Below are positions 8,569-63,412 of a stretch of 64,000 bases of DNA, in pieces. The stretch's first letter is position 1, and every line of letters starts with the position of its first letter. The translations under genes and the position numbers were made by a program. The stretch lies in the IMG/VR virus record IMGVR_UViG_3300037882_001770, positions 248,001 through 312,000 of that record, one strand, 5' to 3'. Below the pieces are notes generated by a model. That model did not search any database. It had not been told where the DNA came from and saw nothing but the letters and a program-made list of their open reading frames with translations.

Positions 8569-10848
8569 ATGCAAAATAATCCCGAAATTGAACAAATTAT
8601 CGAATCTGCGGTCCGCATTGCAAAAGATAAACAGCACGAATACGTACTGACTGAACATGTGTTGCTGGCCATGTTGAAGTATGCGCCGTTTCGCAAAGTC
8701 TTGGCCAAGTATGGAACCACTGTGGATTTGTTTGAACAGGAATTAGAAAGTTATCTTGACAGCCTAGTTAATCTTGTCAAGGCAAATGCCAACTTACAAC
8801 CTAAAAAAACAAATGCACTCGAGCGTTGTTTCAACCGAGCTCTTACTCAGGTACTGTTCACTGGACGTAGAACAATTACCACAGCAGATTTATATCTGGC
8901 CATGATGAGTGAAACAAACAGTCATGCACACTATTTCTTGTTGAAGTATGGCGTAAAGAAAAACGAGTTTGTTGAGTTTTGGCAAAAACACTACAATCAC
9001 AATGATATTAAAATTACCGACCAACAGGCTGATGAAATTTTAACTGAGCACTGTACTGATTTAACCAAGATGGCGCATGAAAATCAACTTGAGCCAATGA
9101 TTGGTCGCAGTAGTGAACTAGATGAAATGATCACAGTGCTGGCTCGCAAGTTCAAAGCCAACGTGCTTATGGTTGGAGATCCCGGAGTAGGCAAGACAGC
9201 TATTGTAGAAGGCCTAGCCCAGGAAATCAATGCAGGACGTGTTCCTGAGTTTCTTAAAGGCTACGAAGTGTGGGGGCTCGAAATTGGCAGCTTGCTTGCT
9301 GGTTCAAAATATCGCGGCGAGTTTGAAGAAAAATTCAAACAAGTTATTAGTGCGTTAGAAGCCAAGAAAAATTGCATCTTGTTTATTGATGAGGCGCACA
9401 CTATGAAAGGTGCTGGCAGTTCTAGCAACAGCACACTTGATTTTGCAAACATGTTAAAACCGGCCATCACCAAGGGCAATTTAAAGGTGGTAGCCAGTAC
9501 TACCTGGGAAGAATTTTACGAATCGTTTGAAAAAGATCGTGCATTGATGCGCCGTTTCCATCGCGTAAGCATCGACGAACCCAACGACGAAACTACAGAA
9601 CAGATTCTAATTGGACTTAGTCCACGTTTGGAATCATATCATAATGTGTTGATTGACACAGATGCTATGACAGCCGCTGTGGAATTAAGTCGACGTTATA
9701 TTCATGATCGTCAAAATCCAGACAAGAGTATCGACTTGTTAGACGGTGCCTGTGCTAAGGAACGTGTTAAAGATATGGGCACAGTGACTATTACCAAGGA
9801 CATGATCATGGCTCAGCTCAGTAGGATCACAAATGTTCCGTTGGATCGTTTACAAAACGAACGTTCGACTAAAATTGTTGATTTAGAAAGCAACATCAAA
9901 CAGAAATTATACGGACAAGATGCCGCAGTCGACGCAGTATTGGATCGTGTGTACATCAACTTCTCTGGTATCGGTAACCAAACACGCCCAATTGCTAGTT
10001 TCTTGTTTTTAGGACCAACAGGTACAGGTAAAACAGAGCTTGCCAAATTGTTAGCCGAAAACTTAGACATGCAGTTGTTGAAATACGATATGAGTGAATA
10101 TCAAGAACGGCATACAGTATCAAGTTTGATTGGTGCACCCCCGGGCTATGTAGGATTTGATGATGGCAATCTAGGTGGCGGCAAACTAATCGCCGACATT
10201 AGTAAAAACCCATTTAGTATTGTGTTGTTTGATGAAATTGAAAAGGCGCATCCGGATGTGATCAATATCATGTTGCAGATGCTGGACGAAGCCAGACTTA
10301 CCAGTAGTAATGGCAAAACTGTGAATCTCAAGAACTGCATTATCATTATGACCAGTAATTTAGGCGCCAAAGACAACGAAAGTAACAATATTGGATTTGC
10401 TCAAAGTTTAGAAAAATCAGGCGAAGAAAATCGTGCAATGAAAGAATTCTTCAAACCTGAGCTACGTAATCGTATTGATCAAATTTGCAAGTTTGTTAAA
10501 TTGGACACATTGGCCATCAAGAAGATTGTGGTCAAGTTTACAGACCAGTTGCAATCCAGTCTTGCTGACAAGAACATCCGTCTCACTCTAAGCGAACCAG
10601 TGATTGATCTGTTGGCTGACAAAGGCTACGATAATAAAATGGGTGCAAGACCACTTAATCGCAAAATTGACGAATTGATACGAGTACCGTTGTCTAAGAA
10701 AATTTTGTTTGATCAATTGACCAACTGCAATATCCATGCAGTGATCAATGGTGATGCAATTGATTTTCAAATTACACCCATGGACGCTCAGCCCATAGTT
10801 GACAGTGAAGGATACATAGTTCTTGATCAATTCAAGCCCACAATCTAA
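8569..10848 (+). CDS. clpA: ClpA-like AAA+ unfoldase
   Basis: Two AAA modules (GDPGVGKT, GPTGTGKT), LIGAPPGYVG, IGF ClpP-docking loop, no ClpB middle domain. Confidence 0.9.
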   Translation: MQNNPEIEQIIESAVRIAKDKQHEYVLTEHVLLAMLKYAPFRKVLAKYGTTVDLFEQELESYLDSLVNLVKANANLQPKKTNALERCFNRALTQVLFTGRRTITTADLYLAMMSETNSHAHYFLLKYGVKKNEFVEFWQKHYNHNDIKITDQQADEILTEHCTDLTKMAHENQLEPMIGRSSELDEMITVLARKFKANVLMVGDPGVGKTAIVEGLAQEINAGRVPEFLKGYEVWGLEIGSLLAGSKYRGEFEEKFKQVISALEAKKNCILFIDEAHTMKGAGSSSNSTLDFANMLKPAITKGNLKVVASTTWEEFYESFEKDRALMRRFHRVSIDEPNDETTEQILIGLSPRLESYHNVLIDTDAMTAAVELSRRYIHDRQNPDKSIDLLDGACAKERVKDMGTVTITKDMIMAQLSRITNVPLDRLQNERSTKIVDLESNIKQKLYGQDAAVDAVLDRVYINFSGIGNQTRPIASFLFLGPTGTGKTELAKLLAENLDMQLLKYDMSEYQERHTVSSLIGAPPGYVGFDDGNLGGGKLIADISKNPFSIVLFDEIEKAHPDVINIMLQMLDEARLTSSNGKTVNLKNCIIIMTSNLGAKDNESNNIGFAQSLEKSGEENRAMKEFFKPELRNRIDQICKFVKLDTLAIKKIVVKFTDQLQSSLADKNIRLTLSEPVIDLLADKGYDNKMGARPLNRKIDELIRVPLSKKILFDQLTNCNIHAVINGDAIDFQITPMDAQPIVDSEGYIVLDQFKPTI

Positions 10849-14217: not shown

Positions 14218-17200
14218 ATGAATATTAATGAACTGGATTCTTTTCGTCTTTCTGATGCTGTAAAGTTTAATGATACATTAAACCCACGTCTGTGGGACAA
14301 GCAAGAAAAATTAAAGCCCGAAATCCGAAATCGTCTGTTGGAAATAGCCGACGATTTTCGTGAGTTTTTAGGCGTTACTAATTTACAACTCAAAGACATT
14401 ACAATATCAGGCTCTAATGCAGCCTATACCTACACCCCACACAGCGACATTGACCTGCACTTAGTGGTGGACCTGCCCGAAGCAGATCAAAACGAAGTGT
14501 ACCGTGAATTGTTTGACGCTAAAAAATATCAATACAATGATATGCACAATATCAAACTTGGTGGGCACGATGTAGAATTGTATGTTGAAAATGCCAACAA
14601 AAAACCAGTTAGTCAAGGCATATACAGTGTCTTGAACAACGAGTGGGTTGATATTCCGCAACGTAAAAAAGCCAATGTTGACGACATTAGCACTCGCAAC
14701 AAATACAATGATTTGAGTCAGCGCATTGATTCTGCTATTCGCAGTGGCGATCAAGAACAGATAGAAACACTCAGCAGCAAAATCAAAGAAATGCGTCAGA
14801 CTGGACTAGATCAGCACGGTGAATTTGGTCCAGAGAATTTGGCATTTAAAATGTTGCGTACTCAAGGCAAAATCAAAGAGCTATACGATGCTCGCAATGC
14901 GGCCAAAGACGAATTGTTGAGCTTGGATGAACGCAAAAAGAAACGCAAAAAGAAAGTTCGTTACGGATACGGCGGTTACTGGTATCCAGGCACAGCCTAT
15001 GCCGGTCAAGATCATTCAGCCGGAACCGAAGGTGGTGGTGGAGACGGTGGTGGTGGTGGTGAAAGCATCAGAGAATCTGCGGAAACCACCGACGAAGAAA
15101 TTCTTAAAGACTTTGTTGACTTTTGTGTCAAAGAATTAAAAATAGAAAATTTACCAATTATTAAATTACGACGTGATCCGCAATGGCCGGTGGTGCACAA
15201 AACCTTTGGGCGTTATAACGATGACAAAGAAATGCTGGAAGTGGCATTCGGTCAACGACACATTATGGATGTGCTTCGCACAGTGGCGCATGAGCTTACC
15301 CATCGGCATCAACACGAGCGTGAAGACGTTCCGGGTGATGCCGGTGAAACCGGCAGTCCTTACGAAAACGAAGCCAATGCCAGGGCCGGAGTACTCATGC
15401 GTGACTATGCCGGACTGCACCCAGAATATTTCAAAGTAGGACAAGCAGAAGAATCACACTGTGACGAAGTTGATGAAGGGCTCAAAGGTAAATTAGGTGC
15501 CATGGCTGCTGCGGCGTGTATCGCTGGCACCCCTGGATGTTCAACTACTGCTGGTGCTCTTAAAACTGCACAAGATGTTGGGCGCACTGCTCAGACTGTT
15601 AAGAACATGAGCCGTGCTGGTGTTCAAGATGAGCTTGGCCAAGAACTGCGTAATTTTCTTCGGGCCCAGGGCGGCGAACCTGGCAGTCAAAATCAAAGTA
15701 GATTGTACCAATTACAAAAGCGAGCCACACAAAAAGAATCAGCTAGTGGCTATATTCCCACAAAGAAACAAGCCAAAGATCCACGTTTCAGCATGGCACT
15801 TACACAGGATATCAAGCCTGGCCAACTGGGTAAAGAGGCAAACAAATTAAAATTAAAGACCGATCGTCAAGGCCATCCGCAAGTAGCTAGCCCCAATGGC
15901 TTGTTTGAAAAATTAAGTTTAGAATTAAACAAATTTAAAAAAGGTGAAACAGACGAAGACTATAGTCCAGACAATCCGCCCGGACCCGAGTTTAAGCCCA
16001 CTATGCCAGCAGGAACTCTGCGTGTAGATGTAAGCGATGTATATGATTGGTACAAATTAGGCCAACATATCAGCAACATGCAAGGCCTAGGCAAACATGA
16101 TTTTGGTCAAGGTCCTCCTGGTGCTATTGTTAGTTTTGGTGACGAAGATACCGAACATAAATTTATCCAAGATCTTGAAGCCACTGGGTTGGATATCACA
16201 GACATTGATCCTGCAGATCCAAAACAACCTGCTGGGATGCGCACCATCAAAACAGATCCTACATACAAGGTAGATGAAGTAATACAAGCTCCTGTAAACA
16301 AATATAAAGATGATAAACAGTATTATAATTTCATTATGGCCAAACATAAACTAGGCCGCCCATTAACACGTCAAGAACAAGAATATGTAAGAAGCTACAA
16401 AATGTTTAATCAACAAGTTGCAGAATCTGTTGACCAACTAGACGAAGTGGCCATGAGCCCCAGTGCCTTGGCCAAGTGGGCTCAAAGTCCAGAAGCCGAA
16501 GGCATACGTGCTGGTTTTGAAGCCGAACTGATCTTTCGCGATACTACCAATGACGACGATGATGATACCGAAATGGAGCCCGACTATGATTATGACGAAC
16601 GGCCTCGCAGTATATCGGATGTCATAGACTTTTTTAATGGTGGCGACTACGGTGGCCTGAGTGATAGACAAGAAGGTCGATTACAAGACGGTCTAGATCA
16701 ACAGTACATGGAGTGGCAAGACGAACGCATGTATGACGCCTGGCGTGACGAACGTGAAGACTTGATCCGTGAAGCCTGGTTGCGTGAAAAGCCCATGGTT
16801 GAACGTGTTCACGACTATCTAGTAGAAGGCATGGACATGGACGATCGAGAAGCTGATCGCATTCAAGCAGCCGGCGACGCGGCCCCACGCTTTACCAAAT
16901 TGAGTGACCAAGAGGCTTACAAACAAGCCAACCCAGATTACGCAACTTATTTGGAAGCCGATGAAGGCGCCGAAGAAATCCTACAAGAAGAAGTTGAGCA
17001 GACCATTGAGAAAGAAGATGGCTTCTACGACGAAGTCCTGGATGAATTCCGCGAGAATTTTTATACTGACGATGACTCTAGCTTCTTTCAGGATGTTGGG
17101 CTGGGTTACATGAGTGACATAGCGTCAGAATACAGCTTAGACTGGCCTTATCTGACTGGATCCGGCGGTGGCAACAACGGTGGACGTCGTGAGTGGGATG

Positions 17201-18855
17201 ATGTTGGCAACAGTTTACAAGATGCTATAGACATGCCGGTTCGAGTCAGCCAGGGCTATCACAGCATGCCACGCAAGGAAGGTCAATGGATTGTGGAACC
17301 TGACTCCAGTTTGAGTCCGGACGACAGAGAAGACTTTGGCTTGGAAATAGTAAGCCCACCCTTGCCCCTATTGACTGCACTGGAAAAACTGCAAGAAGTC
17401 ACCGACTGGGCCAACAATCCCTCAGAAGGCAATGCCTATACCAACAGCAGTACAGGCCTACACATGGGTGTCAGCGTGCCTTATAAAGGTGGCGATGTGG
17501 ACTACTTAAAACTGATCCTGTTCCTAGGTGACGAATATGTGTTGCAGAGTTTTGGACGTGAAGCTAATACATATACCAAATCAGCTATGAAAGCCTTCCG
17601 TGAAAACATTAGGTCAGGACGTGCTGATCCTGCAGGTGCCATGGCCCTGATGCGGAGCAACCTAATAGAGTTTGCCTATAGGGAAATACAAAAAGGTGTG
17701 GGTGGCGGCAAGTACACCAGTGCGCACATACAGGACGGCTATATTGAATTCCGTAGTGCTGGTGGTGACTGGTTGGCCGAGGAGTCAGCAGATCCCCAAA
17801 AGTTATCCAGTACCATGTTGCGCTATGCTAGAGCCATGCAGATAGCGGCCGACCCTAGTGCCGAACGTAGAGAGTTTGCCAAAAAGTTATACAAGATGGT
17901 GTCTCCCGAAGGTGATAGTCAACTAGCCCTGTTCAGTCAGTTTTCTGCAGGTGAGCTCACAGCAGAACAACTCAAGAAAAAGTGGGCTGAAAAGACCATT
18001 GGCACAGAAAAGAAAGCAAATCAACGCTGGAAGCTGTATCAAATGGCCGACGGCGGATGGCAACCGGTGTCAGGTGCTGAATGGAACGGCTACACTGAAG
18101 AGCAGGTCAAGAATGCTGTATGGAGCAAGTACGGGCGTGAAGCACTAGATTCCGGTGAATACAAGTTGGTCAACATGGGCGAGCAGGAGTGGGAAGTATA
18201 CCGTGTTGACACAGGTGAAACTCTCGAAGTGGTCAAAGGCAAGAGTCGAGGCGAAGTGGCTGATTCAGTGTATGACAAGTACGCAACCCAAAAGATTGGA
18301 TTCAATGTGCGTCCATATCAAGATCCTGCCACCATGACTCCAAGAGCCAAGTTGGCCAAGCGTATTGCAACCAAGAAACCAGAACCAAAACAAGTAGCCA
18401 ACCAAGCAACCAACGAGCGTGGCGTTCCTTATTGGGAAGTATATGACATTAGCAACGACCAGATTGTGATCCATACATTCCTAAGTGATACCGCAGCCGA
18501 CGCCAAAGTAGATGGAGCAAATTGGCTGAAAAGTTTTGGTGCTACACACCCCGAGTTGTTTGCAGTAAGACCCAAGATAAAAACCGCACAGGTCAAAGAT
18601 GTAGAACCTAATGTGGCACAGAACTTTGACAGTGCTCGAGACAGTGCCACCCTGCAGACCAACTTGCAAGGCAGGTCATCGCCGGATGCAACTGAAGTCC
18701 CTCGCAACTGGGAATTCGTAAATCGTATAAACGGTCAAGTTATTCATAATATGACAAATGCCAGCTATAACCAGGCCAATGTAGTGCAAGATAATCTTGA
18801 ACTTAGATATCCAGATGCAGACATATATTTGCGTAGTGTAGAGAGATCAAATTAA
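14218..18855 (+). CDS. Large polyvalent protein: Pol-beta nucleotidyltransferase + zincin metallopeptidase + amidoligase + repeated C-terminal modules
   Basis: ISGSNA...SDIDLHL (GS/DxD); VAHELTHRHQ...ENEANA; GFEAEL, EPDSSL, EIVSPP, STGLHMGVS, IEFRS. Confidence 0.75.
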   Translation: MNINELDSFRLSDAVKFNDTLNPRLWDKQEKLKPEIRNRLLEIADDFREFLGVTNLQLKDITISGSNAAYTYTPHSDIDLHLVVDLPEADQNEVYRELFDAKKYQYNDMHNIKLGGHDVELYVENANKKPVSQGIYSVLNNEWVDIPQRKKANVDDISTRNKYNDLSQRIDSAIRSGDQEQIETLSSKIKEMRQTGLDQHGEFGPENLAFKMLRTQGKIKELYDARNAAKDELLSLDERKKKRKKKVRYGYGGYWYPGTAYAGQDHSAGTEGGGGDGGGGGESIRESAETTDEEILKDFVDFCVKELKIENLPIIKLRRDPQWPVVHKTFGRYNDDKEMLEVAFGQRHIMDVLRTVAHELTHRHQHEREDVPGDAGETGSPYENEANARAGVLMRDYAGLHPEYFKVGQAEESHCDEVDEGLKGKLGAMAAAACIAGTPGCSTTAGALKTAQDVGRTAQTVKNMSRAGVQDELGQELRNFLRAQGGEPGSQNQSRLYQLQKRATQKESASGYIPTKKQAKDPRFSMALTQDIKPGQLGKEANKLKLKTDRQGHPQVASPNGLFEKLSLELNKFKKGETDEDYSPDNPPGPEFKPTMPAGTLRVDVSDVYDWYKLGQHISNMQGLGKHDFGQGPPGAIVSFGDEDTEHKFIQDLEATGLDITDIDPADPKQPAGMRTIKTDPTYKVDEVIQAPVNKYKDDKQYYNFIMAKHKLGRPLTRQEQEYVRSYKMFNQQVAESVDQLDEVAMSPSALAKWAQSPEAEGIRAGFEAELIFRDTTNDDDDDTEMEPDYDYDERPRSISDVIDFFNGGDYGGLSDRQEGRLQDGLDQQYMEWQDERMYDAWRDEREDLIREAWLREKPMVERVHDYLVEGMDMDDREADRIQAAGDAAPRFTKLSDQEAYKQANPDYATYLEADEGAEEILQEEVEQTIEKEDGFYDEVLDEFRENFYTDDDSSFFQDVGLGYMSDIASEYSLDWPYLTGSGGGNNGGRREWDDVGNSLQDAIDMPVRVSQGYHSMPRKEGQWIVEPDSSLSPDDREDFGLEIVSPPLPLLTALEKLQEVTDWANNPSEGNAYTNSSTGLHMGVSVPYKGGDVDYLKLILFLGDEYVLQSFGREANTYTKSAMKAFRENIRSGRADPAGAMALMRSNLIEFAYREIQKGVGGGKYTSAHIQDGYIEFRSAGGDWLAEESADPQKLSSTMLRYARAMQIAADPSAERREFAKKLYKMVSPEGDSQLALFSQFSAGELTAEQLKKKWAEKTIGTEKKANQRWKLYQMADGGWQPVSGAEWNGYTEEQVKNAVWSKYGREALDSGEYKLVNMGEQEWEVYRVDTGETLEVVKGKSRGEVADSVYDKYATQKIGFNVRPYQDPATMTPRAKLAKRIATKKPEPKQVANQATNERGVPYWEVYDISNDQIVIHTFLSDTAADAKVDGANWLKSFGATHPELFAVRPKIKTAQVKDVEPNVAQNFDSARDSATLQTNLQGRSSPDATEVPRNWEFVNRINGQVIHNMTNASYNQANVVQDNLELRYPDADIYLRSVERSN

Positions 18856-28387: not shown

Positions 28388-31045
28388 ATGAGTTATATTG
28401 ACGCACTTTTTGATCGTGAACACGATCGCATACATGTAGTTGAACGGCGAGATGGCAAGAGATGCTATCAGGAATATCCGGCCAACTACATTTTTTATTA
28501 CGAAGATCCCCGTGGCAAATTTCAAAGCATTTTTGGAACATCAGTCAGCAGATTCAGCACACGCAACAACAAAGAGTTTCGTAAAGAAATTCGCATACAG
28601 TCGGGCAAGAAATTATTTGAATCCGACATTAATCCTGTATTCCGCTGTCTTGAGGACAACTACAAAGGACAAGACGGTCCCAAGTTAAATGTAGCGTTCT
28701 TTGACATTGAGGTCGACTTTGACCCCGAACGTGGCTTTAGTCCAACAACAGATCCATTCAATGCTATCACTGCTATTTCAGTTTATCTGCAGTGGCTAGA
28801 GCAGATGGTCACTCTTGTTGTACCTCCAAAGCATATGAGTCGAGCTACTGCGGATGAAATTGCTCGAGAGTTTGAAAACTGCATTGTGTTTGAGCGAGAA
28901 GAAGAAATGTTAAAAACTTTCTTGGATCTTATCGAAGACGCCGATGCACTTTCAGGCTGGAATAGTGAAGGGTATGATATACCCTACACAATTAATCGTG
29001 TTACCCGTGTTCTGAGCAAAGATGACACCCGTAGATTTTGTTTATGGAACCAATATCCTAAAAAACGCATGTTTGAACGCTTTGGCGCAGAGAATGAAAC
29101 CTATGACTTAATTGGCCGCGTGCATATGGACTATATGCAACTGTATCGCAAATACACCTACGAAGAGCGTCATAGTTATAGTTTGGATGCTATTGCTGAA
29201 TACGAACTCCAAGAAACCAAGACTGTGTTTGAAGGCACCCTGGATCAACTGTACAACCAAAACTTCAAAAAGTTTATTGAATACAACAGGCAAGATACAA
29301 TGATTCTGGCCAAGCTAGATAAGAAATTAAAATTCTTAGACCTAGCGAACACACTGGCGCATGAAAACACTGTATTGCTACAAACTACCATGGGTGCTGT
29401 GGCTGTAACTGAGCAGGCCATTATCAATGAGGCACACGAACGTGGTATGGTTGTGCCCAATCGCAAGGAACGCTACAGTGATGAGGACACCCAGGCCGCC
29501 GGAGCTTATGTTGCCTTTCCAAAGAAAGGCATCCACGAATATGTAGGCTCGATAGACATCAATTCATTGTATCCCAGTGCCATTCGTGCGCTTAACATGG
29601 GACCCGAGACTATTGTGGGACAACTAAGACCCATAATGACCGAACGTTACATCAGCGACAAGATGCGTGGTGGGGCCAGCTTTGCAGCGGCGTGGGAAGG
29701 CTTGTTTGGCAGTTTAGAATATGAAGCGGTCATGGCCGCCGAGCCCGGTACAGAGATCACCATAGACTGGCAAGATGGTGAGGAGTCGGTCCATAGTGCG
29801 GCCGAAGTATGGAAGATAATTTTTGATAGTAACCACCCCTGGATGATCACTGCCAATGGCACTATCTTTACCTATGAAAAAGAAGCAGTTATTCCTGGCT
29901 TGCTAAAACGTTGGTATGCCGAACGTAAAGAGATGCAGGCCAAACTTAAAGAGTGTAAAAATGCGGAAGATGAAGAATATTGGGACAAGCGTCAACTTGT
30001 TAAAAAGATTAACCTCAACAGTCTCTATGGTGCTATTCTTAATCCTGGTTGCCGTTTCTTTGATAAGCGTATTGGTCAGTCCACAACTCTTACTGGTCGT
30101 GCCATTGCCCGGCACATGGATGCTTATGTAAACGAGTGTATCACAGGCAAATATGATCATGTAGGTGAGTCAATCATCTATGGTGACACTGATTCCTGCT
30201 ATTTTACAGCCTATCCGATTTTACAAAAAGAGATAGAAGCCGGTAACATGACATGGAATCGAGAAATTGCCGTACAACTGTATAATAGCATTTCTGATCA
30301 AGTTAACGATAGCTTTCCGGGCTTTATGGAGCAGGCATTCCATGTTCCACGCGAGATGGGCAATGTGATCAAAGGCGGTCGAGAGATTGTGGCCAGCAAA
30401 GGCTTGTTCATTACCAAAAAACGTTACGCTGTCATGTATTATGACAAAGAAAACAAGCGTGTGGACACACACGGTAGCCCGGGCAAGGTCAAAGCCATGG
30501 GTCTTGATCTCAAACGCAGTGATACTCCTAAGGTCATTCAAGAATTTCTAAGCGAAATCTTAAACGAGGTACTAGTGGGTGCCACACGTGAAAGTATTAT
30601 TGAAAAGATTCGCGAGTTCAAATACAAGTTCAAAGAGCGTCCAGGTTGGGAAAAAGGCAGCCCCAAGCGTGTAAATAATTTAACCAAGTATGGCAAGGAA
30701 GAAGAACGTCTAGGCAAAGCCAACATGCCGGGCCATGTCCGTGCAGCACTCAACTGGAACAATCTACGTAGAATGAATAGCGACAAGTACAGCATGCAGA
30801 TTGTCGACGGCATGAAAACTATTGTGTGTAAGTTAAAAGCTAATCCACTAGGTTGGACCAGCATAGGTTACCCCACTGATGAACAACATTTACCTCAATG
30901 GTTCAAAGAACTGCCGTTTGATGACAGTGAAATGGAAGCCACAGTAGTGGATCAAAAGATCAATAATCTGTTGGGAGTGCTGGAGTGGGATCTAGCAAGT
31001 GCCACCAACACAGAAAACACATTCCAAACCTTGTTTGAGTGGTAA
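28388..31045 (+). CDS. polB: Family B DNA polymerase (T4 gp43-like)
   Basis: Exo FDIE, GWNSEGYD, YNRQD; polymerase DINSLYPS, KINLNSLYG, YGDTDS. Confidence 0.97.
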   Translation: MSYIDALFDREHDRIHVVERRDGKRCYQEYPANYIFYYEDPRGKFQSIFGTSVSRFSTRNNKEFRKEIRIQSGKKLFESDINPVFRCLEDNYKGQDGPKLNVAFFDIEVDFDPERGFSPTTDPFNAITAISVYLQWLEQMVTLVVPPKHMSRATADEIAREFENCIVFEREEEMLKTFLDLIEDADALSGWNSEGYDIPYTINRVTRVLSKDDTRRFCLWNQYPKKRMFERFGAENETYDLIGRVHMDYMQLYRKYTYEERHSYSLDAIAEYELQETKTVFEGTLDQLYNQNFKKFIEYNRQDTMILAKLDKKLKFLDLANTLAHENTVLLQTTMGAVAVTEQAIINEAHERGMVVPNRKERYSDEDTQAAGAYVAFPKKGIHEYVGSIDINSLYPSAIRALNMGPETIVGQLRPIMTERYISDKMRGGASFAAAWEGLFGSLEYEAVMAAEPGTEITIDWQDGEESVHSAAEVWKIIFDSNHPWMITANGTIFTYEKEAVIPGLLKRWYAERKEMQAKLKECKNAEDEEYWDKRQLVKKINLNSLYGAILNPGCRFFDKRIGQSTTLTGRAIARHMDAYVNECITGKYDHVGESIIYGDTDSCYFTAYPILQKEIEAGNMTWNREIAVQLYNSISDQVNDSFPGFMEQAFHVPREMGNVIKGGREIVASKGLFITKKRYAVMYYDKENKRVDTHGSPGKVKAMGLDLKRSDTPKVIQEFLSEILNEVLVGATRESIIEKIREFKYKFKERPGWEKGSPKRVNNLTKYGKEEERLGKANMPGHVRAALNWNNLRRMNSDKYSMQIVDGMKTIVCKLKANPLGWTSIGYPTDEQHLPQWFKELPFDDSEMEATVVDQKINNLLGVLEWDLASATNTENTFQTLFEW

Positions 31046-57376: not shown

Positions 57377-57424
57377 ATCAACTGCGGTATTGTTATCATG
57401 CGCCGCCACCATTTTAGGAAAAAT

Positions 57425-58609
57425 ATGTACACCGTCGAACAAAATGACAAGCTGGGTTTTTATCAATTTGGAGATAAGAAATTCCACAACAAAGTAACTG
57501 CGTTAATTGAAGGAACCAAAGCCAACCAATTTCCAGAATGGAATTTCAACAAACAAGTATTTGATCAAACCAATTGGACTGTAGAACCCCCAGCAGGACT
57601 GCAAGAGTTGTATAGACTGCGGGCACTACAGTTGCGCGAACAGTACGACTATATTAGACTAGAGTGCAGTGGTGGCGGGGATTCGGCCACTGTGGCCTAC
57701 AGTTTTATCAACAACGGAATACACCTGGACGAAGTGATCTTTAGATATCCCAAAACTGGTGAAAAGAATGCCACTGATGATCCGTTCAATACCAAACCCG
57801 AAAATACCCTCAGTGAATTTCGCTTTGCAGCCAAGCCCCTGTTGCAGTGGATTGCAGACCATAGTCCTGCTACCAAAATTGTCATACACGACTACAGTGA
57901 GGACATGCTCAAAAGCCAACACGATGAATCCTGGGTGTTTAAAACTAGAGATTATTTTCAGCCCGGGCACCCATTCAAACACACAGTAGATGCCTTGGAT
58001 GATCACAAGCGTACCTTGGATCAAGGGCGCAGGGTCTGCATGCTGTGGGGTGTTGACAAGCCCAAGATCTGCATCAAAGACAAAAAATGGTATGTGTATT
58101 TTATGGACGTGCAGGCCAATGCAGCCAATCCCGACACGGCGGGCTACAGCAACATCACCAATGAATATTTCTTCTGGACTCCGGATCTGCCCGAGCTGTT
58201 GGTCAAACAAGCACACATGATCAAGAACTGGTTTGACCTCGAAAGCAACAAGCATCTACAACACTTGGTACGCTGGCCCAACTACAGCTTTACACAACGC
58301 ACAGCCTTTGAACACATTATCAAACCGTTGATTTATCCTGACTATGATCAGACCACATTTCAAACTGCCAAACCCACCAACAGCTTTTACAACGAAATGG
58401 ATCATTGGTTTTATACCAATTTTCAAGAAACACATGCGTACCGCACATGGAAAGCTGGACTCAATTTCTTGACCAGCAATATAGATCCCAAGTATTTCAA
58501 CAATGAAATGGGACGTCCTGTGGGCTTTGTGGGCTTTATCAGTCCGTTTTATTATCTGGGTGATGCACATTTTGAAGATCCCGGTACCAATTTACACTTT
58601 AAATTTTAA
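57425..58609 (+). CDS. PP-loop adenine nucleotide alpha-hydrolase-fold protein
   Basis: IRLECSGGGDSATV (SGGxDS), WGVDKP; start after AGGA RBS. Confidence 0.7.
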   Translation: MYTVEQNDKLGFYQFGDKKFHNKVTALIEGTKANQFPEWNFNKQVFDQTNWTVEPPAGLQELYRLRALQLREQYDYIRLECSGGGDSATVAYSFINNGIHLDEVIFRYPKTGEKNATDDPFNTKPENTLSEFRFAAKPLLQWIADHSPATKIVIHDYSEDMLKSQHDESWVFKTRDYFQPGHPFKHTVDALDDHKRTLDQGRRVCMLWGVDKPKICIKDKKWYVYFMDVQANAANPDTAGYSNITNEYFFWTPDLPELLVKQAHMIKNWFDLESNKHLQHLVRWPNYSFTQRTAFEHIIKPLIYPDYDQTTFQTAKPTNSFYNEMDHWFYTNFQETHAYRTWKAGLNFLTSNIDPKYFNNEMGRPVGFVGFISPFYYLGDAHFEDPGTNLHFKF

Positions 58610-58611
58610 CA

Positions 58612-59910
58612 ATGGAGTTGTTGATCTTATTAACAGCTGGGTTAGTGACCGGCATACTGATTGGTTTGTTCCCGGTATTTCCTGTGTACGCTGGTGCATT
58701 TATTCTTTACTTGACCAGCGGCCTGTGGACTCCAGAACAGATGCTGTTGTTTTGGATTGTGGCCAGCATCGGCAGCCAATTTTTTGCCAGTGTTAGTGCT
58801 ATTACACTGGGCATACCAGGCGATGCCAGCAGTTTGGTCTATATAAAAGATGTTAAAAAATTATCACTGTTGGAACGCAATCAACTGCTGTGGTTGACCA
58901 GTCGTGGTAGTTTAATCAGCGGCATAATAAGTTTGGTCTTGGTCTGGGTGTTGTACTATGTGTACACCGCAACCGGTCAAACATTTTTGTTTTCCATTGA
59001 AGCCAAATTGCTATTACTGTATTCAGTTATATTTTTCTTTATTGTCACTAGCCAGCAAAAAATACTCACACTACTGTTAAGTATATTTGGTGTGTTGATT
59101 TCTCCGCAAAACAATTACAGTTTGCCCAGCGAATGGTTTCATTTTTCAACCTTGTTTCAAAATACCACATTCTTTATGCTGATATTGGCATTAATGATGA
59201 TTCCCGACATGCTGAATTATCGCACACTACAAATAGATAATAAAAATCAATATTCTACAATTCCGTCGCAGATGCCCTGGTGGTTGATATTAAAAAATTC
59301 CATACTGGGCTGTTTGGTAGGCTTGATCCCAGGCCCGGCTGCAGAGGTGGCTGCATCAGCTGCTTATTCGTCTACTAGAACAAAAAATACCAGTTTAAAA
59401 ATTGTAGCTGCCGAAACTGCCAATAATCCCGGGGTGGTCATGATGATCTTGCCGTTGTTGTTGTTGGGTCTGCCTTTTACTTCCAGCAGTTTGATAGTGA
59501 GCAATATCATGGACAGCAAAATGGTCGCGTTGCCCGAGCTGGCCAGATCAGCCAGCACAATTGTCACAGGATTTACTGTGTTTGATGTCATGATCATTAT
59601 GGCTGTCATGACCACAGTCATTTATTATGCACTGAGTATACAGTTTATTAATGTTTATACCCGACTGGTCAGTTCTGCATATGACAAATTTAAATGGGCA
59701 ATGATTGTGCTGGTGTTGGGTATGGTCGGCGCCGACATATACATACAAGAAATATCCTGGCTGGCCTATGCAACTCTGCTAATTTTTTATATTGCTGTAG
59801 GTCAGGTACTAAGGCACTTTCGCGTCAGCCCAGTGCCCATGATATTTGTGTATTTGTTAGGAGATCAGTTGATCTGGGCCACCGGCCAATTTTTAGCCAT
59901 ACACTTTTGA
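58612..59910 (+). CDS. TctA-like tripartite tricarboxylate transporter membrane subunit
   Basis: Multiple TM helices; ITLGIPGD, GLIPGPAA, AAETANN motifs. Confidence 0.75.
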   Translation: MELLILLTAGLVTGILIGLFPVFPVYAGAFILYLTSGLWTPEQMLLFWIVASIGSQFFASVSAITLGIPGDASSLVYIKDVKKLSLLERNQLLWLTSRGSLISGIISLVLVWVLYYVYTATGQTFLFSIEAKLLLLYSVIFFFIVTSQQKILTLLLSIFGVLISPQNNYSLPSEWFHFSTLFQNTTFFMLILALMMIPDMLNYRTLQIDNKNQYSTIPSQMPWWLILKNSILGCLVGLIPGPAAEVAASAAYSSTRTKNTSLKIVAAETANNPGVVMMILPLLLLGLPFTSSSLIVSNIMDSKMVALPELARSASTIVTGFTVFDVMIIMAVMTTVIYYALSIQFINVYTRLVSSAYDKFKWAMIVLVLGMVGADIYIQEISWLAYATLLIFYIAVGQVLRHFRVSPVPMIFVYLLGDQLIWATGQFLAIHF

Positions 59911-59913
59911 CCG

Positions 59914-59921
59914 TATAAATA
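59914..59921 (+). promoter_or_regulatory. T4-type late promoter TATAAATA
   Basis: Perfect TATAAATA 5 nt upstream of the structured element. Confidence 0.65.
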
Positions 59922-59926
59922 TTCCT

Positions 59927-60038
59927 GCAACGCCGGGTTCTTCCGACGTGGGATTTCAACAAGACGCTTGACATACGGATGTCTTTACTGTATTATTAAT
60001 ACAGAACGCCTGCCCTGAGTAGAGCTCTTCTACTAGCA
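59927..60038 (+). ncRNA. Structured leader element, copy 1 (riboswitch/cis-RNA candidate)
   Basis: Shares GCAACGCCGGG, CCGACGT, GACGCTT, TTTACT, AGAACGCC with copy 2; three stems covary. Confidence 0.7.
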
Positions 60039-60067
60039 TTAAAATTCATTAACTTAAAGGAAATTAA

Positions 60068-60898
60068 ATGAAACTTCGATTCATCGTGGCCTCTATATTG
60101 GCCGTAGCTGTATCCACCGCATCCGCTGATGTGATTGTCAACAACAGCAACAAAGCCAGTCCTGGCACAGTGGTAGCAAAAACATTTGAAACAGCAGTGG
60201 GCACCAACAAGATTGACTTCTTTCAAGCCAATACGTGTGAAGAGGCACAAGCAAAATTTCAGTCTAGTAAAAATGCAGTAATGATTTACAATGCCGACGT
60301 TGGAATTGCAGCCCTGGGCAAAGGATTAAAATGCCCACTGACAGCCAAACCAGAACAAACTGTGTTCATTGGAAAAAGCTATTTAAAAGTGTGTACCAGT
60401 GCCAAAGCGCCCAAAACACTAGAACAGGCCAAAACCATTGGCGCTGCCAGCGTTATTCTGAGCAAAGGACTTGTTGAGGACTACAACAGCAATGGATTAA
60501 ATCTCAAAGGTGTTCCCTACGGTGGCAGCGTAGGTGTATTGGGCGGACTGATCGCCGGTGACATCGATGTGGGCTTTGTGGCCAGCAGCATTGCCGATCC
60601 TGCAATCGAATCCGGACAAATCACTTGTGCATTGAGTACCGATCCGCGTCGTGCAGATTATGTGGCCAACAAGTACAAGTTAAAAGTACCGTCCATGCCC
60701 ATTGTCAAGGTATTCTACACCAACACCGACAATCCTGCATTTATTTCTGAGTTGCAAGCTGCCGTAAAGAAAGAAGAGTTTCAGGCATTTTTAGCAAAAG
60801 CCAAATACGATGATGTCAAAACTGGTAAAATTACACAAAAAGACCTTGATGCAGTGCAAAACTACATTACAGATTCGTATAACTACTACTGGAAATGA
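60068..60898 (+). CDS. Periplasmic substrate-binding protein (TctC/Bug-like)
   Basis: Signal peptide ending ASA-D; GVPYGGS...LIAGDIDVGF; follows the TctA-like gene. Confidence 0.6.
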   Translation: MKLRFIVASILAVAVSTASADVIVNNSNKASPGTVVAKTFETAVGTNKIDFFQANTCEEAQAKFQSSKNAVMIYNADVGIAALGKGLKCPLTAKPEQTVFIGKSYLKVCTSAKAPKTLEQAKTIGAASVILSKGLVEDYNSNGLNLKGVPYGGSVGVLGGLIAGDIDVGFVASSIADPAIESGQITCALSTDPRRADYVANKYKLKVPSMPIVKVFYTNTDNPAFISELQAAVKKEEFQAFLAKAKYDDVKTGKITQKDLDAVQNYITDSYNYYWK

Positions 60899-60919
60899 TC
60901 TAGGAGATAAATAAAACTA

Positions 60920-61025
60920 GCAACGCCGGGTCCCGACGTCGGAATTAACTGACGCTTACAGTAGATACTGTTTTACTAGTGTGATACACTAGAACGCCAG
61001 CCGTAGCAGAATTGTTCTGCAAGCA
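60920..61025 (+). ncRNA. Structured leader element, copy 2
   Basis: Same conserved motifs and stem positions as 59927-60038; TAAATA at 60908-60913. Confidence 0.7.
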
Positions 61026-61054
61026 ACAAATTAAATTAAACAGGAGTTCATTAA

Positions 61055-62011
61055 ATGAGCAAAACTACTAAAATCCGTTGGGTAATCGCACACGAGCCAT
61101 TGAGCCTTTTTGTACGTGCGGCGCATGATTTTGAAAAAGAAATCAACGCTCAACAAACAGCAGAAAAAATTGAAATTGAAGTAATGACACTGAGCGAATA
61201 CAGTGCCAAATATAACAACGGTGTTATGGTCACCAAACACGATTTGTTAGATTTGATGGAACAGGGCAAAATTGAAATGAGCCAAATGTACACCACTTGG
61301 TTGGCTGAACATTATGAAAATGATTTCTTGGCTTTTGAAATGCCTTACATTTTCAGCGATCACGAGCATGCTAGCCGTGTGTTGGAAGGCGAAGTTGGTG
61401 AAACACTATTGGCCAAACTCACAGACAACAGCAATGTACGTGGACTTGCTTACACATACTCAGGCGGTTTCCGTTGTTTGGGTGTAAACAAGCCAGTGAG
61501 CACCCTAGCTGATTTAACTGGTGAAAAACTACGTTCAAACCGTAACCCGGTGGGCCGTGCAGTGATCCGCACTATGAGTGGTGTTGAGCCATTTATTTGC
61601 GAAACTGAAGAAGCACGGGAACACGTTGCTCGTGGTGATTGCAACGGCAATGACACAGTTTACAGCCGTATCTATCCATTGAGCCAAAATGACGTAATTC
61701 AGTCAGTGGTAGACAGCAAGCACAGCTTGTTCCTGACCACAATGATCATTGGTGATCGCTTCTGGGACAGCCTCAGCTCAGAAGTACGTGCTGTGATCAA
61801 GACGGCTGCTATCCAAGCTGGTCGCAACGAAAGAACCACTACCATTGAAGATGGTCAGCAAGCTCGCGCTCGTTTATTAAGCGAAGGCAAGACAGTGTAT
61901 GAGCCTACCGCAGAAGAAACAGCGGCAATGAAAGCTCGCATGCAGGTAGTATATGATGAATTTGAAAATTCATTTAGCGACAATCTAATCAATCGTATTA
62001 AAACAGCCTAA
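61055..62011 (+). CDS. TRAP DctP-like substrate-binding protein without a signal peptide
   Basis: GKIEMS, FEMPYIF, GGFR, DLTGEKLRS, LFLTTMII; charged, non-hydrophobic N-terminus. Confidence 0.8.
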   Translation: MSKTTKIRWVIAHEPLSLFVRAAHDFEKEINAQQTAEKIEIEVMTLSEYSAKYNNGVMVTKHDLLDLMEQGKIEMSQMYTTWLAEHYENDFLAFEMPYIFSDHEHASRVLEGEVGETLLAKLTDNSNVRGLAYTYSGGFRCLGVNKPVSTLADLTGEKLRSNRNPVGRAVIRTMSGVEPFICETEEAREHVARGDCNGNDTVYSRIYPLSQNDVIQSVVDSKHSLFLTTMIIGDRFWDSLSSEVRAVIKTAAIQAGRNERTTTIEDGQQARARLLSEGKTVYEPTAEETAAMKARMQVVYDEFENSFSDNLINRIKTA

Positions 62012-62029
62012 TTGGCATGAAGTATCAAT

Positions 62030-62063
62030 AAAACAAGCACTGCTGGTCAGTGCTTGTTTTTTG
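62030..62063 (+). terminator. Rho-independent terminator
   Basis: AAAACAAGCACT/AGTGCTTGTTTT inverted repeat with T-run. Confidence 0.8.
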
Positions 62064-62128
62064 TCATAAATTATGGCACTGCTGGTTGCGCCATTAAATA
62101 GTAATATCATCTTTATTCTTTTTCCATT

Positions 62129-63412
62129 ATGAATTCATCTAAATCTTCTACTACACGTACAGTAGCGGCCAGCACCGTCGGCACCATTTTTGAATGGTAC
62201 GACTTTGTTATTTTTGGCTTGGCCACTGTGTTGGTTTTTAATAAACTATTTTTTCCCAATATAGATCCAGCATTGGCCTTGGTAGTTTCAATGTTGGCCT
62301 ATGCTGTGGGCATTGTGGCCAGACCCTTGGGTGGCCTAATTTACGGTGCCATCGGCGATCGCTACGGGCGCCGACGCATGTTGGTGGCCACCATGCTGAT
62401 CATGGGTGCCAGTACCTTTGCTATAGGTCTGTTGCCTACCTATAGCACCATTGGCGTATGGGCTCCTATCATGCTAATTGTGCTGCGTATTGTACAGGGC
62501 ATTGGCATCGGCGGTGAATGGGGCGGAGCCAGTGTGATGATTCAAGAATCTGCACCAGATCATCAGCGTGGCTTTTATGCCAGTTTTATACAGACCGGAC
62601 TACCTGCGGGCATGCTGATGGCATCGGGTGTGTTTGCTGCGTTGACCACTGTGTTGACCGAAGCTGAATTCCTAAGCTGGGGATGGCGTATTCCATTCTT
62701 ATTGAGTGCAGTGTTGGTGCTGATAGGCACAGCAATTCGTTATCAAATTCCAGAAACTCCGGTCTTTTTAGCCATGAAAAATGTTTCTAAGTCGCCCATA
62801 CGCGATCTTTTTGTCAAGCATCCCAAGACCTTGTTAAAAGGCATCGGTCTTAAAATAACAGAAAGTGTGTGGTTCTTTATAGTCACAGGATTTATAGTAG
62901 GCTATGCTGTTACCAATTTTGCTATACCTCGTGGAGATCTTTTAAAGATAATCATGGTCAGCAATGCCATCAGTATAGTGTGGGCCCTGGCCATGGGCTA
63001 TCTGTCAGACCAGATAGGTCGCAGAGCCATTTTCTTTTTTGGTGCGGCATTTACTGTCGTAATGCCATTTCCTATCTTTTACTTGGTCAGCACCGGAGAT
63101 TTTTATCTAATTGCAGTGGCCATGATTGCGGGGCAATGCATTGGCAGTACCACTATGTTTGCTGTGTTGAGCTCGTATCTACCTGAAATATTCCCAGCTG
63201 AAGTTCGTAGCACAGGAGCCAGCTTGAGTTTTCAAATAGGAGCAGCCATAACCGGAGGCCTGGTACCGGTATTAGCGGCCTGGGCGGTGGGTGTTTGGGG
63301 CACCAATTATGCAGTGTCCTTATTGATGATGCTGTTTGGCTTGATCACATTTGTCACTGTGCTCAATACCAAAGAAACTTATCAAACATCAATGACGCAA
63401 TTAAATGATTAA
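62129..63412 (+). CDS. MFS transporter, metabolite:H+ symporter family
   Basis: GTIFEWYDF, RPLGG...GDRYGRR, GGEWGGA, SDQIGRR, PEIFP..VRSTG. Confidence 0.92.
   Translation: MNSSKSSTTRTVAASTVGTIFEWYDFVIFGLATVLVFNKLFFPNIDPALALVVSMLAYAVGIVARPLGGLIYGAIGDRYGRRRMLVATMLIMGASTFAIGLLPTYSTIGVWAPIMLIVLRIVQGIGIGGEWGGASVMIQESAPDHQRGFYASFIQTGLPAGMLMASGVFAALTTVLTEAEFLSWGWRIPFLLSAVLVLIGTAIRYQIPETPVFLAMKNVSKSPIRDLFVKHPKTLLKGIGLKITESVWFFIVTGFIVGYAVTNFAIPRGDLLKIIMVSNAISIVWALAMGYLSDQIGRRAIFFFGAAFTVVMPFPIFYLVSTGDFYLIAVAMIAGQCIGSTTMFAVLSSYLPEIFPAEVRSTGASLSFQIGAAITGGLVPVLAAWAVGVWGTNYAVSLLMMLFGLITFVTVLNTKETYQTSMTQLND

What the first reader, a model, noticed from the sequence alone, without database searches (positions are those of the whole stretch)
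59914..61054. Duplicated ~110 nt structured RNA with compensatory base changes, upstream of two solute-binding protein genes
Two intergenic elements (59927-60038 and 60920-61025) each follow a TAAATA late-promoter motif and precede a substrate-binding protein gene. The linker blocks are near-identical: GCAACGCCGGG, CCGACGT, GACGCTT, TTTA, AACGCC-x-GCC and terminal AGCA. The stems differ in sequence but still pair. Stem A is GACAT/ATGTC vs ACAGT/ACTGT (4 of 5 pairs changed). Stem B is CTGTATT/AATACAG vs CTAGTGT/ACACTAG (4 of 5 inner pairs changed). Stem C is AGTAGA/TCTACT vs GCAGAA/TTCTGC. Invariant loops with covarying stems are the classic signature of a functional RNA, and neither copy contains a plausible ORF. 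I cannot match it to a riboswitch class I know. Inference: a phage-encoded riboswitch or protein-binding leader (three unpaired RACGCY motifs) that links transporter expression to a metabolite.
Basis: partly seen in the sequence, partly recalled or inferred. Interest (0 to 1): 0.9.

Follow-up and report, generated by a model that had tools for sequence, protein, structure and literature searches.

The report
New structured leader RNA in jumbo phages
The two repeats are real copies of an uncatalogued, strongly covarying ~112-nt RNA fold found so far only in uncultured jumbo-phage contigs. It forms the 5' end of phage-promoter transcripts for nutrient-uptake and other accessory genes, and what it binds is still unknown.

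Summary
Confirmed. Window 59927-60043 and 60920-61030 (+) are two copies of one ~112-nt element. A covariance model scores them 130 and 105 bits, and nothing else in the window matches. Two pattern scans of IMG/VR recovered 94 distinct relatives. In 85 of 94, TAAATA ends 4-6 nt before the element, and a start codon follows at a median of 139 nt.

Six helices covary (96.9% of cells paired, 25 of 31 pairs with double changes, 0 of 500 shuffles as high). Wobble statistics, the promoter and gene direction all point to the + strand.

There is no Rfam 15 match and no GenBank phage match. Representative genomes of 185,579 bacterial and archaeal species gave one hit, a 7-kb contig in a Polynucleobacter MAG.

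Downstream genes are mixed but mostly transport-related (TctC, DctP, porins, TauD and others). I found no terminator and no conserved anti-SD, so a classical riboswitch is not supported.

- A sequence-invariant helix motif, GACG/CGCC with an A.C mismatch, occurs twice per element.
- 60 of 94 leaders, including copy 1, carry a near-consensus sigma-70 promoter inside the fold.

Best guess: a leader specific to phage-promoter (late-type) transcripts that docks a trans factor to control stability or translation. It is a new member of a known kind.

The parts
59914..59921 (+). TATAAATA, a T4-late-type promoter motif. It ends 5 nt before copy 1, so the predicted +1 is about G59927.
   Evidence: TAAATA ends 5-6 nt before the element in 80 of 94 leaders. 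In the window it occurs 29 times on + against 8 on -, and about 20 of the + sites lie just before ORFs.
59927..60043 (+). Leader RNA copy 1 (class I).
- P0: 59927-28 / 60036-37
- P1: 59930-36 / 59943-49, with C59933.A59946
- P2: 59950-52 / 60013-15 (GGG/CCC)
- Core module: 59963-60010
- PA: 59970-74 / 59979-83
- PB: 59988-94 / 59998-60004
- PC: 60019-23 / 60029-33
   Evidence: R1 hit of 130.1 bits; helices.
59968..59996 (+). Sigma-70-type promoter embedded in the core of copy 1: TTGACA 59968-73, a 17-nt spacer, then TATTAT 59991-96. The predicted +1 is about A60003, the start of AGAACGCC.
   Evidence: It scores 11 of 12. 60 of 94 leaders share it, with a TAnnnT conservation pattern.
60068..60898 (+). 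Secreted TctC/Bug-fold solute-binding protein, 276 aa. AGGA SD at 60058-60061.
60907..60913 (+). ATAAATA promoter motif, ending 6 nt before copy 2.
60920..61030 (+). Leader RNA copy 2 (class II, no sigma-70 promoter).
- P0: 60920-21 / 61023-24
- P1: 60923-29 / 60933-39, with C60926.A60936
- P2: 60940-42 / 61001-03
- Core module: 60951-60998
- PA: 60958-62 / 60967-71
- PB: 60976-82 / 60986-92
- PC: 61006-11 / 61015-20
   Evidence: R1 hit of 104.9 bits.
61055..62011 (+). DctP-family solute-binding protein, 318 aa, without an N-terminal signal peptide. AGGAG SD at 61042-61046.
58612..59910 (+). TctA membrane subunit. Its stop codon lies 3 nt before the copy-1 promoter motif, with no terminator between.
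62033..62062 (+). Hairpin plus T-run after the DctP gene, a likely end of the transcription unit. The consensus terminator scan did not list it.
   Evidence: Read from the sequence only.

Best explanation
**What it is (about 0.9).** Both elements belong to an uncatalogued family of ~112-nt cis-acting 5' leader RNAs. The phages that carry it are uncultured jumbo phages of about 200-350 kb, distantly related to the Rak2/Atu_ph07 group. Their hosts are probably Betaproteobacteria.

**Shown.**
- The RNA starts at or within a base of the predicted start site of a TAAATA-type phage promoter.
- P0 pairs nucleotides 1-2 with the 3' AGC and closes a four-way junction of P0, P1, P2 and PC.
- P2 encloses a core module: GACGCUU, hairpin PA, UUUA, hairpin PB (starting CU), then AGAACGCC.
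- All stems covary, while about 45 junction and helix-base nucleotides are nearly invariant.
- The same 4-bp motif, GACG/CGCC with an A.C mismatch, sits at the base of P1. If the invariant blocks GACGCUU and AACGCC pair, a second copy sits at the closing helix of the core.
- A 22-36-nt A/U-rich spacer with an SD follows the fold.
- In 60 of 94 leaders, including copy 1, a near-consensus sigma-70 promoter lies inside the core.

**Inferred from that promoter.** Host-RNAP transcripts from it would start at AGAACGCC and lack the fold, so only transcripts from the upstream phage promoter would carry it.

**Mechanism (inferred, about 0.4).** The fold ties up the 5' end and presents the duplicated A.C motif as a docking site for a trans-acting factor. 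I think a phage or host protein is more likely than a metabolite. The factor would set the stability or translation of accessory, mainly solute-uptake, mRNAs during the phage-promoter phase of infection.
For: - **Family and placement:** (94 distinct leaders; TAAATA spacing of 4-6 nt in 85 of 94; start codon at a median of 139 nt, IQR 134-148).
- **Structure from a MAFFT-only alignment:** one search supports P1, PA and PB. The P1 base pair is AU 63, GC 17, GU 8, AC 0.
- **Structure from the model alignment:** one search gives 96.9% of cells paired, 25 of 31 pairs with double changes, 0 of 500 shuffles as high, and slid controls at 26-52%.
- **P0 covariation:** every leader starting with A has U at the partner position (5 in the MAFFT alignment; AU 5 at that pair).
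- **P2 covariation:** CAG/CUG, GGG/CCC and CGA/UCG.
- **Strand:** by my tally from the per-pair table, interior variable pairs show about 30 G.U against about 5 A.C. All genes and promoters are on +.
- **Invariant A.C positions:** 94-99 of 99 sequences.
- **Modularity:** tandem cores in L005, L167 and L011/L043, and core-only leaders in L096, L098 and L099.
- **Phage-restricted:** searches give one true hit among 185,579 species genomes.
- **Not a general leader:** about 20 other TAAATA sites in the window have 10-40-nt leaders.
- **Embedded promoter:**
- **No conserved SD sequestration:**
Against: - No partner protein is identified. The conserved neighbours (5'-3' exonuclease, metallophosphatase, RpoZ-like protein, MoxR-type AAA ATPase) are not obvious RNA binders.
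- The core closing helix never varies, so its pairing is untested.
- Conserved nucleotides sit in junctions rather than loops, which is also typical of ligand pockets.
- There is no transcript evidence at all. Both start sites and the timing are inferred from motifs.
- The covariation counts come partly from an alignment fitted to the model, and they count sequences rather than independent events.
Confidence: 0.45

Rival explanations
1. It is a riboswitch. The junction nucleotides would form a pocket for a small molecule, either a global signal or a carboxylate such as 2-oxoglutarate or citrate. Binding would change the translation or decay of the uptake-gene mRNA.
For: - The multi-helix junction has invariant junction nucleotides and variable loops.
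- Tandem core modules recall tandem aptamers.
- Many regulated genes handle carboxylates or use 2-oxoglutarate: TctC, DctP, TctA, TauD, Asp/Arg hydroxylase.
Against: - I saw no terminator, and there is no conserved anti-SD.
- The gene set is heterogeneous and includes porins, a desaturase, acyltransferases, a halogenase and proteins with no Pfam match.
- It is essentially absent from bacterial genomes, which is unusual for a sensor of a common metabolite.
- In class I, host-type transcripts would bypass the fold.
Confidence: 0.2
2. It is a passive 5' stabiliser or translation enhancer. The compact fold pairs the 5'-terminal nucleotides and protects highly expressed late mRNAs from 5'-end-dependent decay, as the ompA 5' UTR does, with no dedicated trans factor.
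For: - P0 pairs nucleotides 1-2.
- The leader length, a median of 139 nt, is close to the 133-nt ompA leader (own knowledge).
- Many targets are abundant envelope proteins.
- There is no expression platform.
Against: A stabiliser needs structure, not sequence. Here about 45 nucleotides and three A.C mismatches are invariant across leaders whose stems have turned over completely. Only a few of the many TAAATA-driven genes carry it.
Confidence: 0.2
3. Conservation is mainly at the DNA level. The promoter-plus-leader would be a mobile regulatory cassette or recombination site (like T4 PeSL or integron attC), or a nest of promoter signals, and the RNA fold would be incidental.
For: - Three pairs of leaders share at least 95% identical 5' halves but precede different gene families.
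- An embedded sigma-70 promoter explains TTGACA and TAnnnT in class I.
- The leaders sit in a variable accessory-gene island.
Against: - Compensatory changes occur in six helices, with G.U tolerated and A.C avoided on the + strand.
- The 34 class II leaders have no sigma-70 promoter yet keep every block and helix.
- No recombinase is among the 13 most common gene families in the flanking DNA of the loci (up to about 7 kb a side), 11 of which were scanned against Pfam.
Confidence: 0.07
4. The folded strand is the minus strand, either as an antisense RNA or as single-stranded DNA. On that strand the three invariant A.C mismatches become G.U (G.T) wobbles.
For: The minus strand of copy 2 folds with z = -4.3, against -1.7 for the plus strand. 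All three invariant mismatches would be wobble pairs.
Against: - At variable positions, wobble pairs favour the + strand (about 30 to 5; the P1 base pair has GU 8 and AC 0).
- A promoter motif at fixed distance, and every gene, lie on +.
- The two window spacers hold no reverse-oriented TAAATA.
Confidence: 0.03

Closest known systems
manA, wcaG and PhotoRC-II RNA motifs (Weinberg et al. 2010, PMC2864571)
   Same: They are orphan structured RNAs found by comparative genomics in putative 5' UTRs of host-like auxiliary genes of T4-like phages, and their ligand or partner is unknown.
   Different: The sequence and fold are unrelated; no Rfam model matches even at E up to 10. Those motifs come from marine cyanophages. 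This one starts at the promoter's predicted +1, has duplicated A.C-mismatch helices, and can contain a nested promoter.
Alternative-leader temporal control of T4 genes e and 49 (own knowledge: McPheeters 1986; Barth 1988)
   Same: One gene is served by two promoters of different classes, and the resulting transcripts differ in whether they contain a 5' RNA structure.
   Different: In T4 the long early transcript carries a simple RBS-occluding hairpin and the late promoter lies inside it. Here the phage-type promoter gives the long structured transcript and the host-type promoter lies inside. The fold is complex and does not occlude the RBS.
E. coli ompA 5' UTR stabiliser (own knowledge)
   Same: It is a long structured leader whose paired 5' end could protect an abundant envelope-protein mRNA.
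   Different: The ompA element depends on structure and is not sequence-invariant across distant taxa. It is not a multi-junction fold.
T4 gene 32 translational operator (own knowledge)
   Same: A 5' structured nucleation site is followed by an unstructured A/U-rich stretch that reaches the RBS, and it is bound by a phage protein.
   Different: The gene 32 operator is a small pseudoknot on a single autoregulated gene. Here a ~112-nt fold precedes many unrelated genes.
Polynucleobacter-1 RNA motif, RF01718 (PMC2864571)
   Same: It is a candidate cis-regulatory RNA from Burkholderiales and from fresh-water and estuary metagenomes.
   Different: The Rfam model does not match any copy tested.
T4 PeSL mobile regulatory cassettes (own knowledge: Arbiol 2010)
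   Same: A repeated promoter-plus-stem-loop unit flanks variable accessory ORFs in T4-type genomes. There are hints of exchange between leaders here too.
   Different: PeSLs are early promoters with a single stem-loop, conserved as DNA. Here six helices covary.

Membership tests
Any Rfam 15 family | Match to the family covariance model at its gathering score | tested here: not met
   The whole window gave 0 matches at gathering thresholds. The 59800-61200 region at E up to 10 gave only chance hits, isrK at 17 bits and mir-1910 at 15 bits. Seven related loci had no hit at the element sites.
Polynucleobacter-1 (RF01718) | Covariance-model match | tested here: not met
   It is not listed.
Riboswitch (as a kind) | Conserved structured domain in a 5' UTR, with covariation | tested here: met
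Riboswitch (as a kind) | Expression platform: a terminator/antiterminator or an SD-sequestering alternative pairing | tested here: not met
   I saw no hairpin with a U-run between element and start codon. Within the window leaders, the terminator scan lists only one minus-strand site. The SD pairs with the element at probability above 0.5 in only 17% of leaders.
Riboswitch (as a kind) | Coherent regulon pointing to one ligand | tested here: inconclusive
   The set is transport-dominated but heterogeneous: TctC 37, DctP 10, TauD 7, porins 6-8, and at least 8 other families.
Riboswitch (as a kind) | Direct, selective ligand binding | not testable with these tools
   This needs in-line probing or ITC.
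T4-type late promoter | TATAAATA-like motif about 6-7 nt upstream of the start site, on the coding strand | tested here: met
   TATAAATA lies at 59914-21 and ATAAATA at 60907-13. 85 of 94 leaders have TAAATA ending 4-6 nt upstream. The motif is strand-biased, 29 to 8.
T4-type late promoter | Use by a gp55-like sigma factor, and late timing | not tested
   No gp55 homolog was searched for and no expression data exist. TAAATA also precedes many other genes in the window, so 'late' is an inference.
Sigma-70 promoter (embedded) | TTGACA, then 16-18 nt, then TATAAT, with A2 and T6 of the -10 conserved | tested here: met
   Copy 1 scores 11 of 12. Among 60 of 94 leaders, T1 is 58, A2 is 57 and T6 is 60 of 60, and 53 of 56 score at least 10 of 12, against 0.7% of shuffles. 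Copy 2 does not meet it (8 of 12).
Integron attC-like single-stranded DNA site | A single imperfect hairpin with core sites, placed 3' of promoterless cassettes, with an integrase nearby | tested here: not met
   The fold has several helices, sits behind a promoter and in front of an SD, and no recombinase is among the common neighbour families scanned.
put-like processive antiterminator RNA | Promoter-proximal RNA followed by terminators that it overrides | tested here: not met
   No terminator was seen between 59927 and the hairpin at about 62033-62062.
tRNA or tmRNA-like element | Detection by ARAGORN or an Rfam tRNA model | tested here: not met

The most novel reading that the evidence does not exclude
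This would be the first riboswitch-like sensor class known only from phages. [quoted passage not shown] It would gate the stability or translation of phage-encoded uptake genes only on phage-promoter transcripts, while a nested host-type promoter supplies an unregulated early transcript.
Probability: 0.15. Interest if true: 0.85.

Novelty: new member of a known kind. Interest (0 to 1): 0.6.

Why it matters
- **A ready Rfam candidate.** It is a well-supported structured RNA family: about 100 distinct sequences, six covarying helices and no Rfam match. It comes from a little-studied group of jumbo phages.
- **Regulated host-like genes.** Host-like nutrient-uptake genes carried by phages (TTT and TRAP binding proteins, porins, 2-oxoglutarate oxygenases) appear to be placed under a dedicated post-transcriptional signal rather than simply expressed.
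- **Two unusual design features.** Invariant A.C mismatches occur in a duplicated helix motif. The DNA is also dual-coded, so the arms of two RNA hairpins double as the -35 and -10 of a host-type promoter.
- **Possible uses.** If a ligand or protein partner is found, the element would be a compact new regulatory part and a handle on infection-stage control in uncultured phages.

Tried and rejected
- **Third copy.** An exact GCAACGCCGGG at 11368 (-) has none of the remaining blocks, so it is a chance match.
- **Minus strand.** It folds better because three conserved A.C become G.U. I rejected it on variable-position wobble counts, the promoter and gene orientation.
- **Rfam.** Gathering and E up to 10 thresholds, in the window and in 7 loci, gave nothing.
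- **GenBank phages.** blastn with the region and with a consensus-like copy gave no match. tblastn with a phage TctC found no cultured phage carrying such a gene.
- **Bacterial genomes.** 5 pattern hits, of which only one is real by the model.
- **Leader peptide.** None is conserved.
- **Anti-SD or terminator platform.** Not found. The terminator scan lists only a minus-strand site inside copy 2.
- **tRNA-like.** ARAGORN found none.
- **Partner protein by neighbourhood clustering.** No obvious RNA-binding candidate.
- **Literature.** Searches for a prior description and checks of the 2010 and 2017 motif papers found nothing. The library is incomplete, so this is not proof.
- **Not done.** The metagenome scan (patterns loose enough to add diversity would give mostly chance hits) and a phylogeny-aware covariation test such as R-scape (not available here).
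Full report
**1. Observation**

The region holds TctA (58612-59910), then TATAAATA (59914-21), then element 1 from 59927. A 276-aa ORF follows (60068-60898), then ATAAATA (60907-13), element 2 from 60920, a DctP-family ORF (61055-62011), a hairpin with a T-run at about 62033-62062, and an MFS transporter (62129-63412). All sizeable ORFs in the window are on the + strand.

The two elements align with identical blocks and different, still complementary stems. The joint block patterns occur only at these two places, against 0 expected from shuffles. A covariance model finds only these two in the 64 kb, even with filters off.

The 276-aa ORF has no Pfam match. Its AlphaFold model (pLDDT 90.9) best matches TctC/Bug-family binding proteins.

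**2. A large family**

Scanning IMG/VR with GCAACGCCGGG-N(1-10)-CCGACGT gave 50 loci, of which 29 matches contain the rest of the element. L027 is the window's own contig, IMGVR_UViG_3300037882_001770 (317 kb); the window is roughly positions 248001-312000.

Together the two scans give 114 instances, 94 of them distinct. Many sit on contigs of 200-350 kb.

- TAAATA ends 5-6 nt upstream in 80 of 94 leaders, and 4-6 nt upstream in 85 of 94.
- The next start codon lies at a median of 139 nt from the element start, IQR 134-148. Most have an AGGA or AGGAG SD.

**3. Structure**

RNAalifold on a plain MAFFT alignment of 88 sequences recovers P1, PA and PB, with compensatory changes in 11 of 15 pairs.

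A model built with my full structure aligned 102 hits. On that alignment:
- 96.9% of cells pair.
- 25 of 31 pairs show double changes.
- No shuffle out of 500 reaches the observed values.
- Sliding the 3' partners drops pairing to 26-52%.

This alignment is fitted to the model, and cells are not independent events. However, P0, P2 and PC covariation is also visible in unfitted alignments:
- Every leader that starts with A instead of G has U instead of C at the partner position.
- CGG/CCG changes to CAG/CUG in at least four unrelated leaders, to GGG/CCC in two, and to CGA/UCG in one.

The architecture is as follows. P0 (nt 1-2 with the GC of the 3' AGC) closes a four-way junction of P0, P1, P2 and PC. 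P2 encloses a variable linker and the core module, which reads GACGCUU, PA (5 bp), UUUA, PB (6-8 bp, starting CU), then (A/U)(G/U)AACGCC. Loops vary, and the invariant nucleotides sit at helix bases and junctions.

**4. Strand**

The minus strand of copy 2 folds better (z -4.3 against -1.7). The reason is that three + strand A.C juxtapositions, invariant in 94-99 of 99 sequences, would be G.U on the minus strand.

At positions that do vary, the + strand is favoured:
- The P1 base pair is AU 63-68, GC 17-19, GU 8, AC 0.
- By my tally from the per-pair table, interior pairs show about 30 G.U against about 5 A.C.

With the promoter motif and every gene on +, I take the + strand RNA as the folded molecule and the A.C positions as a conserved special feature. 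One leader (L167) has C-G instead of C.A in P1.

**5. The duplicated motif**

- One copy sits at the base of P1. The adjoining pair there covaries A-U, G-C and G.U.
- The other sits at the closing helix of the core, followed by a second C.A.

The core closing helix never varies, so its pairing is neither supported nor contradicted (helix 4).

The core is modular:
- L005, L167 and L011/L043 have two cores in tandem inside P2.
- L096, L098 and L099 have a core alone behind a TATAAAT motif.

**6.

The consensus scan flags TTGACA-17-TATTAT inside copy 1 at 59968-59996, scoring 11 of 12.

Across the family, 60 of 94 leaders carry GCTTGACA, where the PA 5' arm GACAU is part of the -35. These form class I.
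- The spacer is 17 nt in 46 and 18 nt in 14.
- The -10 shows the classical TAnnnT pattern: T1 in 58, A2 in 57 and T6 in 60 of 60, with variable middle positions.
- T6 lies in the PB loop, where pairing imposes nothing.
- 53 of 56 score at least 10 of 12, against 0.7% of shuffled cores.
- The predicted +1 falls 0-2 nt before AACGCC. The phage-type promoter likewise starts 2 nt before the 5' AACGCC.

The other 34 leaders (class II, including copy 2) have no such promoter but keep all blocks and helices.

Two conclusions follow. The RNA fold is selected independently of the promoter. And in class I, only transcripts from the upstream TAAATA promoter would contain the fold.

**7. Context**

Downstream genes:

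| Family | Count |
|---|---|
| TctC binding proteins | 37 |
| DctP | 10 |
| TauD dioxygenases | 7 |
| Family of about 380 aa, no Pfam match | 7 |
| Porin_4 | 6-8 |
| Hexapeptide transferases | 5 |
| Family of about 200 aa, no Pfam match | 5 |
| Fatty-acid desaturase | 4 |
| DUF2061 | 3 |
| TctA, Trp halogenase, Asp/Arg hydroxylase, others | singletons |

- About 20 other TAAATA sites in the window precede ORFs by only 10-40 nt, so the long leader is specific to a few genes.
- Related loci carry Betaproteobacteria-type tmRNA and tRNA arrays.
- The only hit in representative genomes of 185,579 species is a 7-kb contig binned with Polynucleobacter.
- The window's DNA polymerase is 42-50% identical to those of Phosso, Atu_ph07 and Rak2/121Q-like jumbo phages.
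- No GenBank phage carries the element or a TctC gene.

**8. Mechanism**

Shown: a compact, sequence-constrained fold that begins at the predicted start site of a phage-type promoter, followed by an open A/U-rich spacer and SD.

Not found: a terminator, a conserved anti-SD, a leader peptide, or a coherent regulon.

The element is restricted to one phage lineage. It has a duplicated, occasionally triplicated, sequence-invariant helix motif. In class I it would be bypassed by host-type transcripts. Together these fit best with docking of a trans factor that acts while the phage-type promoter is in use, to control mRNA stability or translation. I put that at about 0.4.

A metabolite or ion sensor (0.2) and a factor-independent stabiliser (0.2) remain open. 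DNA-level and minus-strand readings are unlikely.

**9. Novelty**

There is no Rfam 15 match, and I found no description in the searchable literature. It works like the orphan auxiliary-gene leader motifs of cyanophages (manA, wcaG, PhotoRC-II) but is not a member of any of them. It is a new member of a known kind. Interest is moderate to high.

Noticed in passing
window 59968-59996; 60 of 94 related leaders: A near-consensus sigma-70 promoter (TTGACA-17/18-TAnnnT) is embedded in the RNA fold. The arms of hairpins PA and PB double as the -35 and -10. Its predicted +1 is at AGAACGCC.
   Followed up: yes
window 61055-62011 and its relatives (e.g. L037, L044, L066): The phage DctP-family binding protein starts MSKTTKIRWVIAHEP, which is the mature N-terminus with no signal peptide. 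It may act in the cytoplasm rather than the periplasm.
   Followed up: partly
window 58612-63412: There is a transport-gene island: TctA, a TctC-fold binding protein, a DctP-like protein and an MFS transporter. No TctB or DctQM partners were recognised. The 403-aa ORF at 57398-58609 upstream of TctA has no Pfam or PHROG match.
   Followed up: partly
window, 29 sites on + against 8 on - (list): TAAATA, often cTAAATA, is strongly strand-biased and sits 10-40 nt before about 20 ORFs. It looks like the general phage promoter motif here, so calling it 'late' is an assumption.
   Followed up: partly
L005 6161-6488, L037 11153-11522, L066 7699-8108, L152 6862-6987; tRNA arrays in L037 12234-13249, L005 and L039: Related phage contigs encode a Betaproteobacteria-type tmRNA and large tRNA arrays close to the leader-bearing genes. 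This points to a betaproteobacterial host.
   Followed up: partly
L053:1917-2162 and 31 other loci: A small phage protein of about 80 aa matches RNA polymerase omega/Rpb6 (PF01192, E 2e-11) and is conserved near the island.
   Followed up: no
L152 (CAYVBV010000094.1): A 7-kb contig binned into an uncultured Polynucleobacter MAG carries the leader and part of a tmRNA. It is probably a phage fragment, so it gives either a host hint or a binning artefact.
   Followed up: partly
window 8569-10848; 14218-18855; 28388-31045: The window also encodes an ATP-dependent protease-like protein (phrog_4871, E 3e-237), a 1545-aa ORF of unknown function, and a family B DNA polymerase 42-50% identical to those of Rak2/Atu_ph07-like jumbo phages.
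   Followed up: partly
L027 copy 1 vs L030; L006 vs L020; L052 vs L092: Leaders with at least 95% identical 5' halves precede different gene families. This suggests recombination within the leader, in the style of cassette shuffling.
   Followed up: partly
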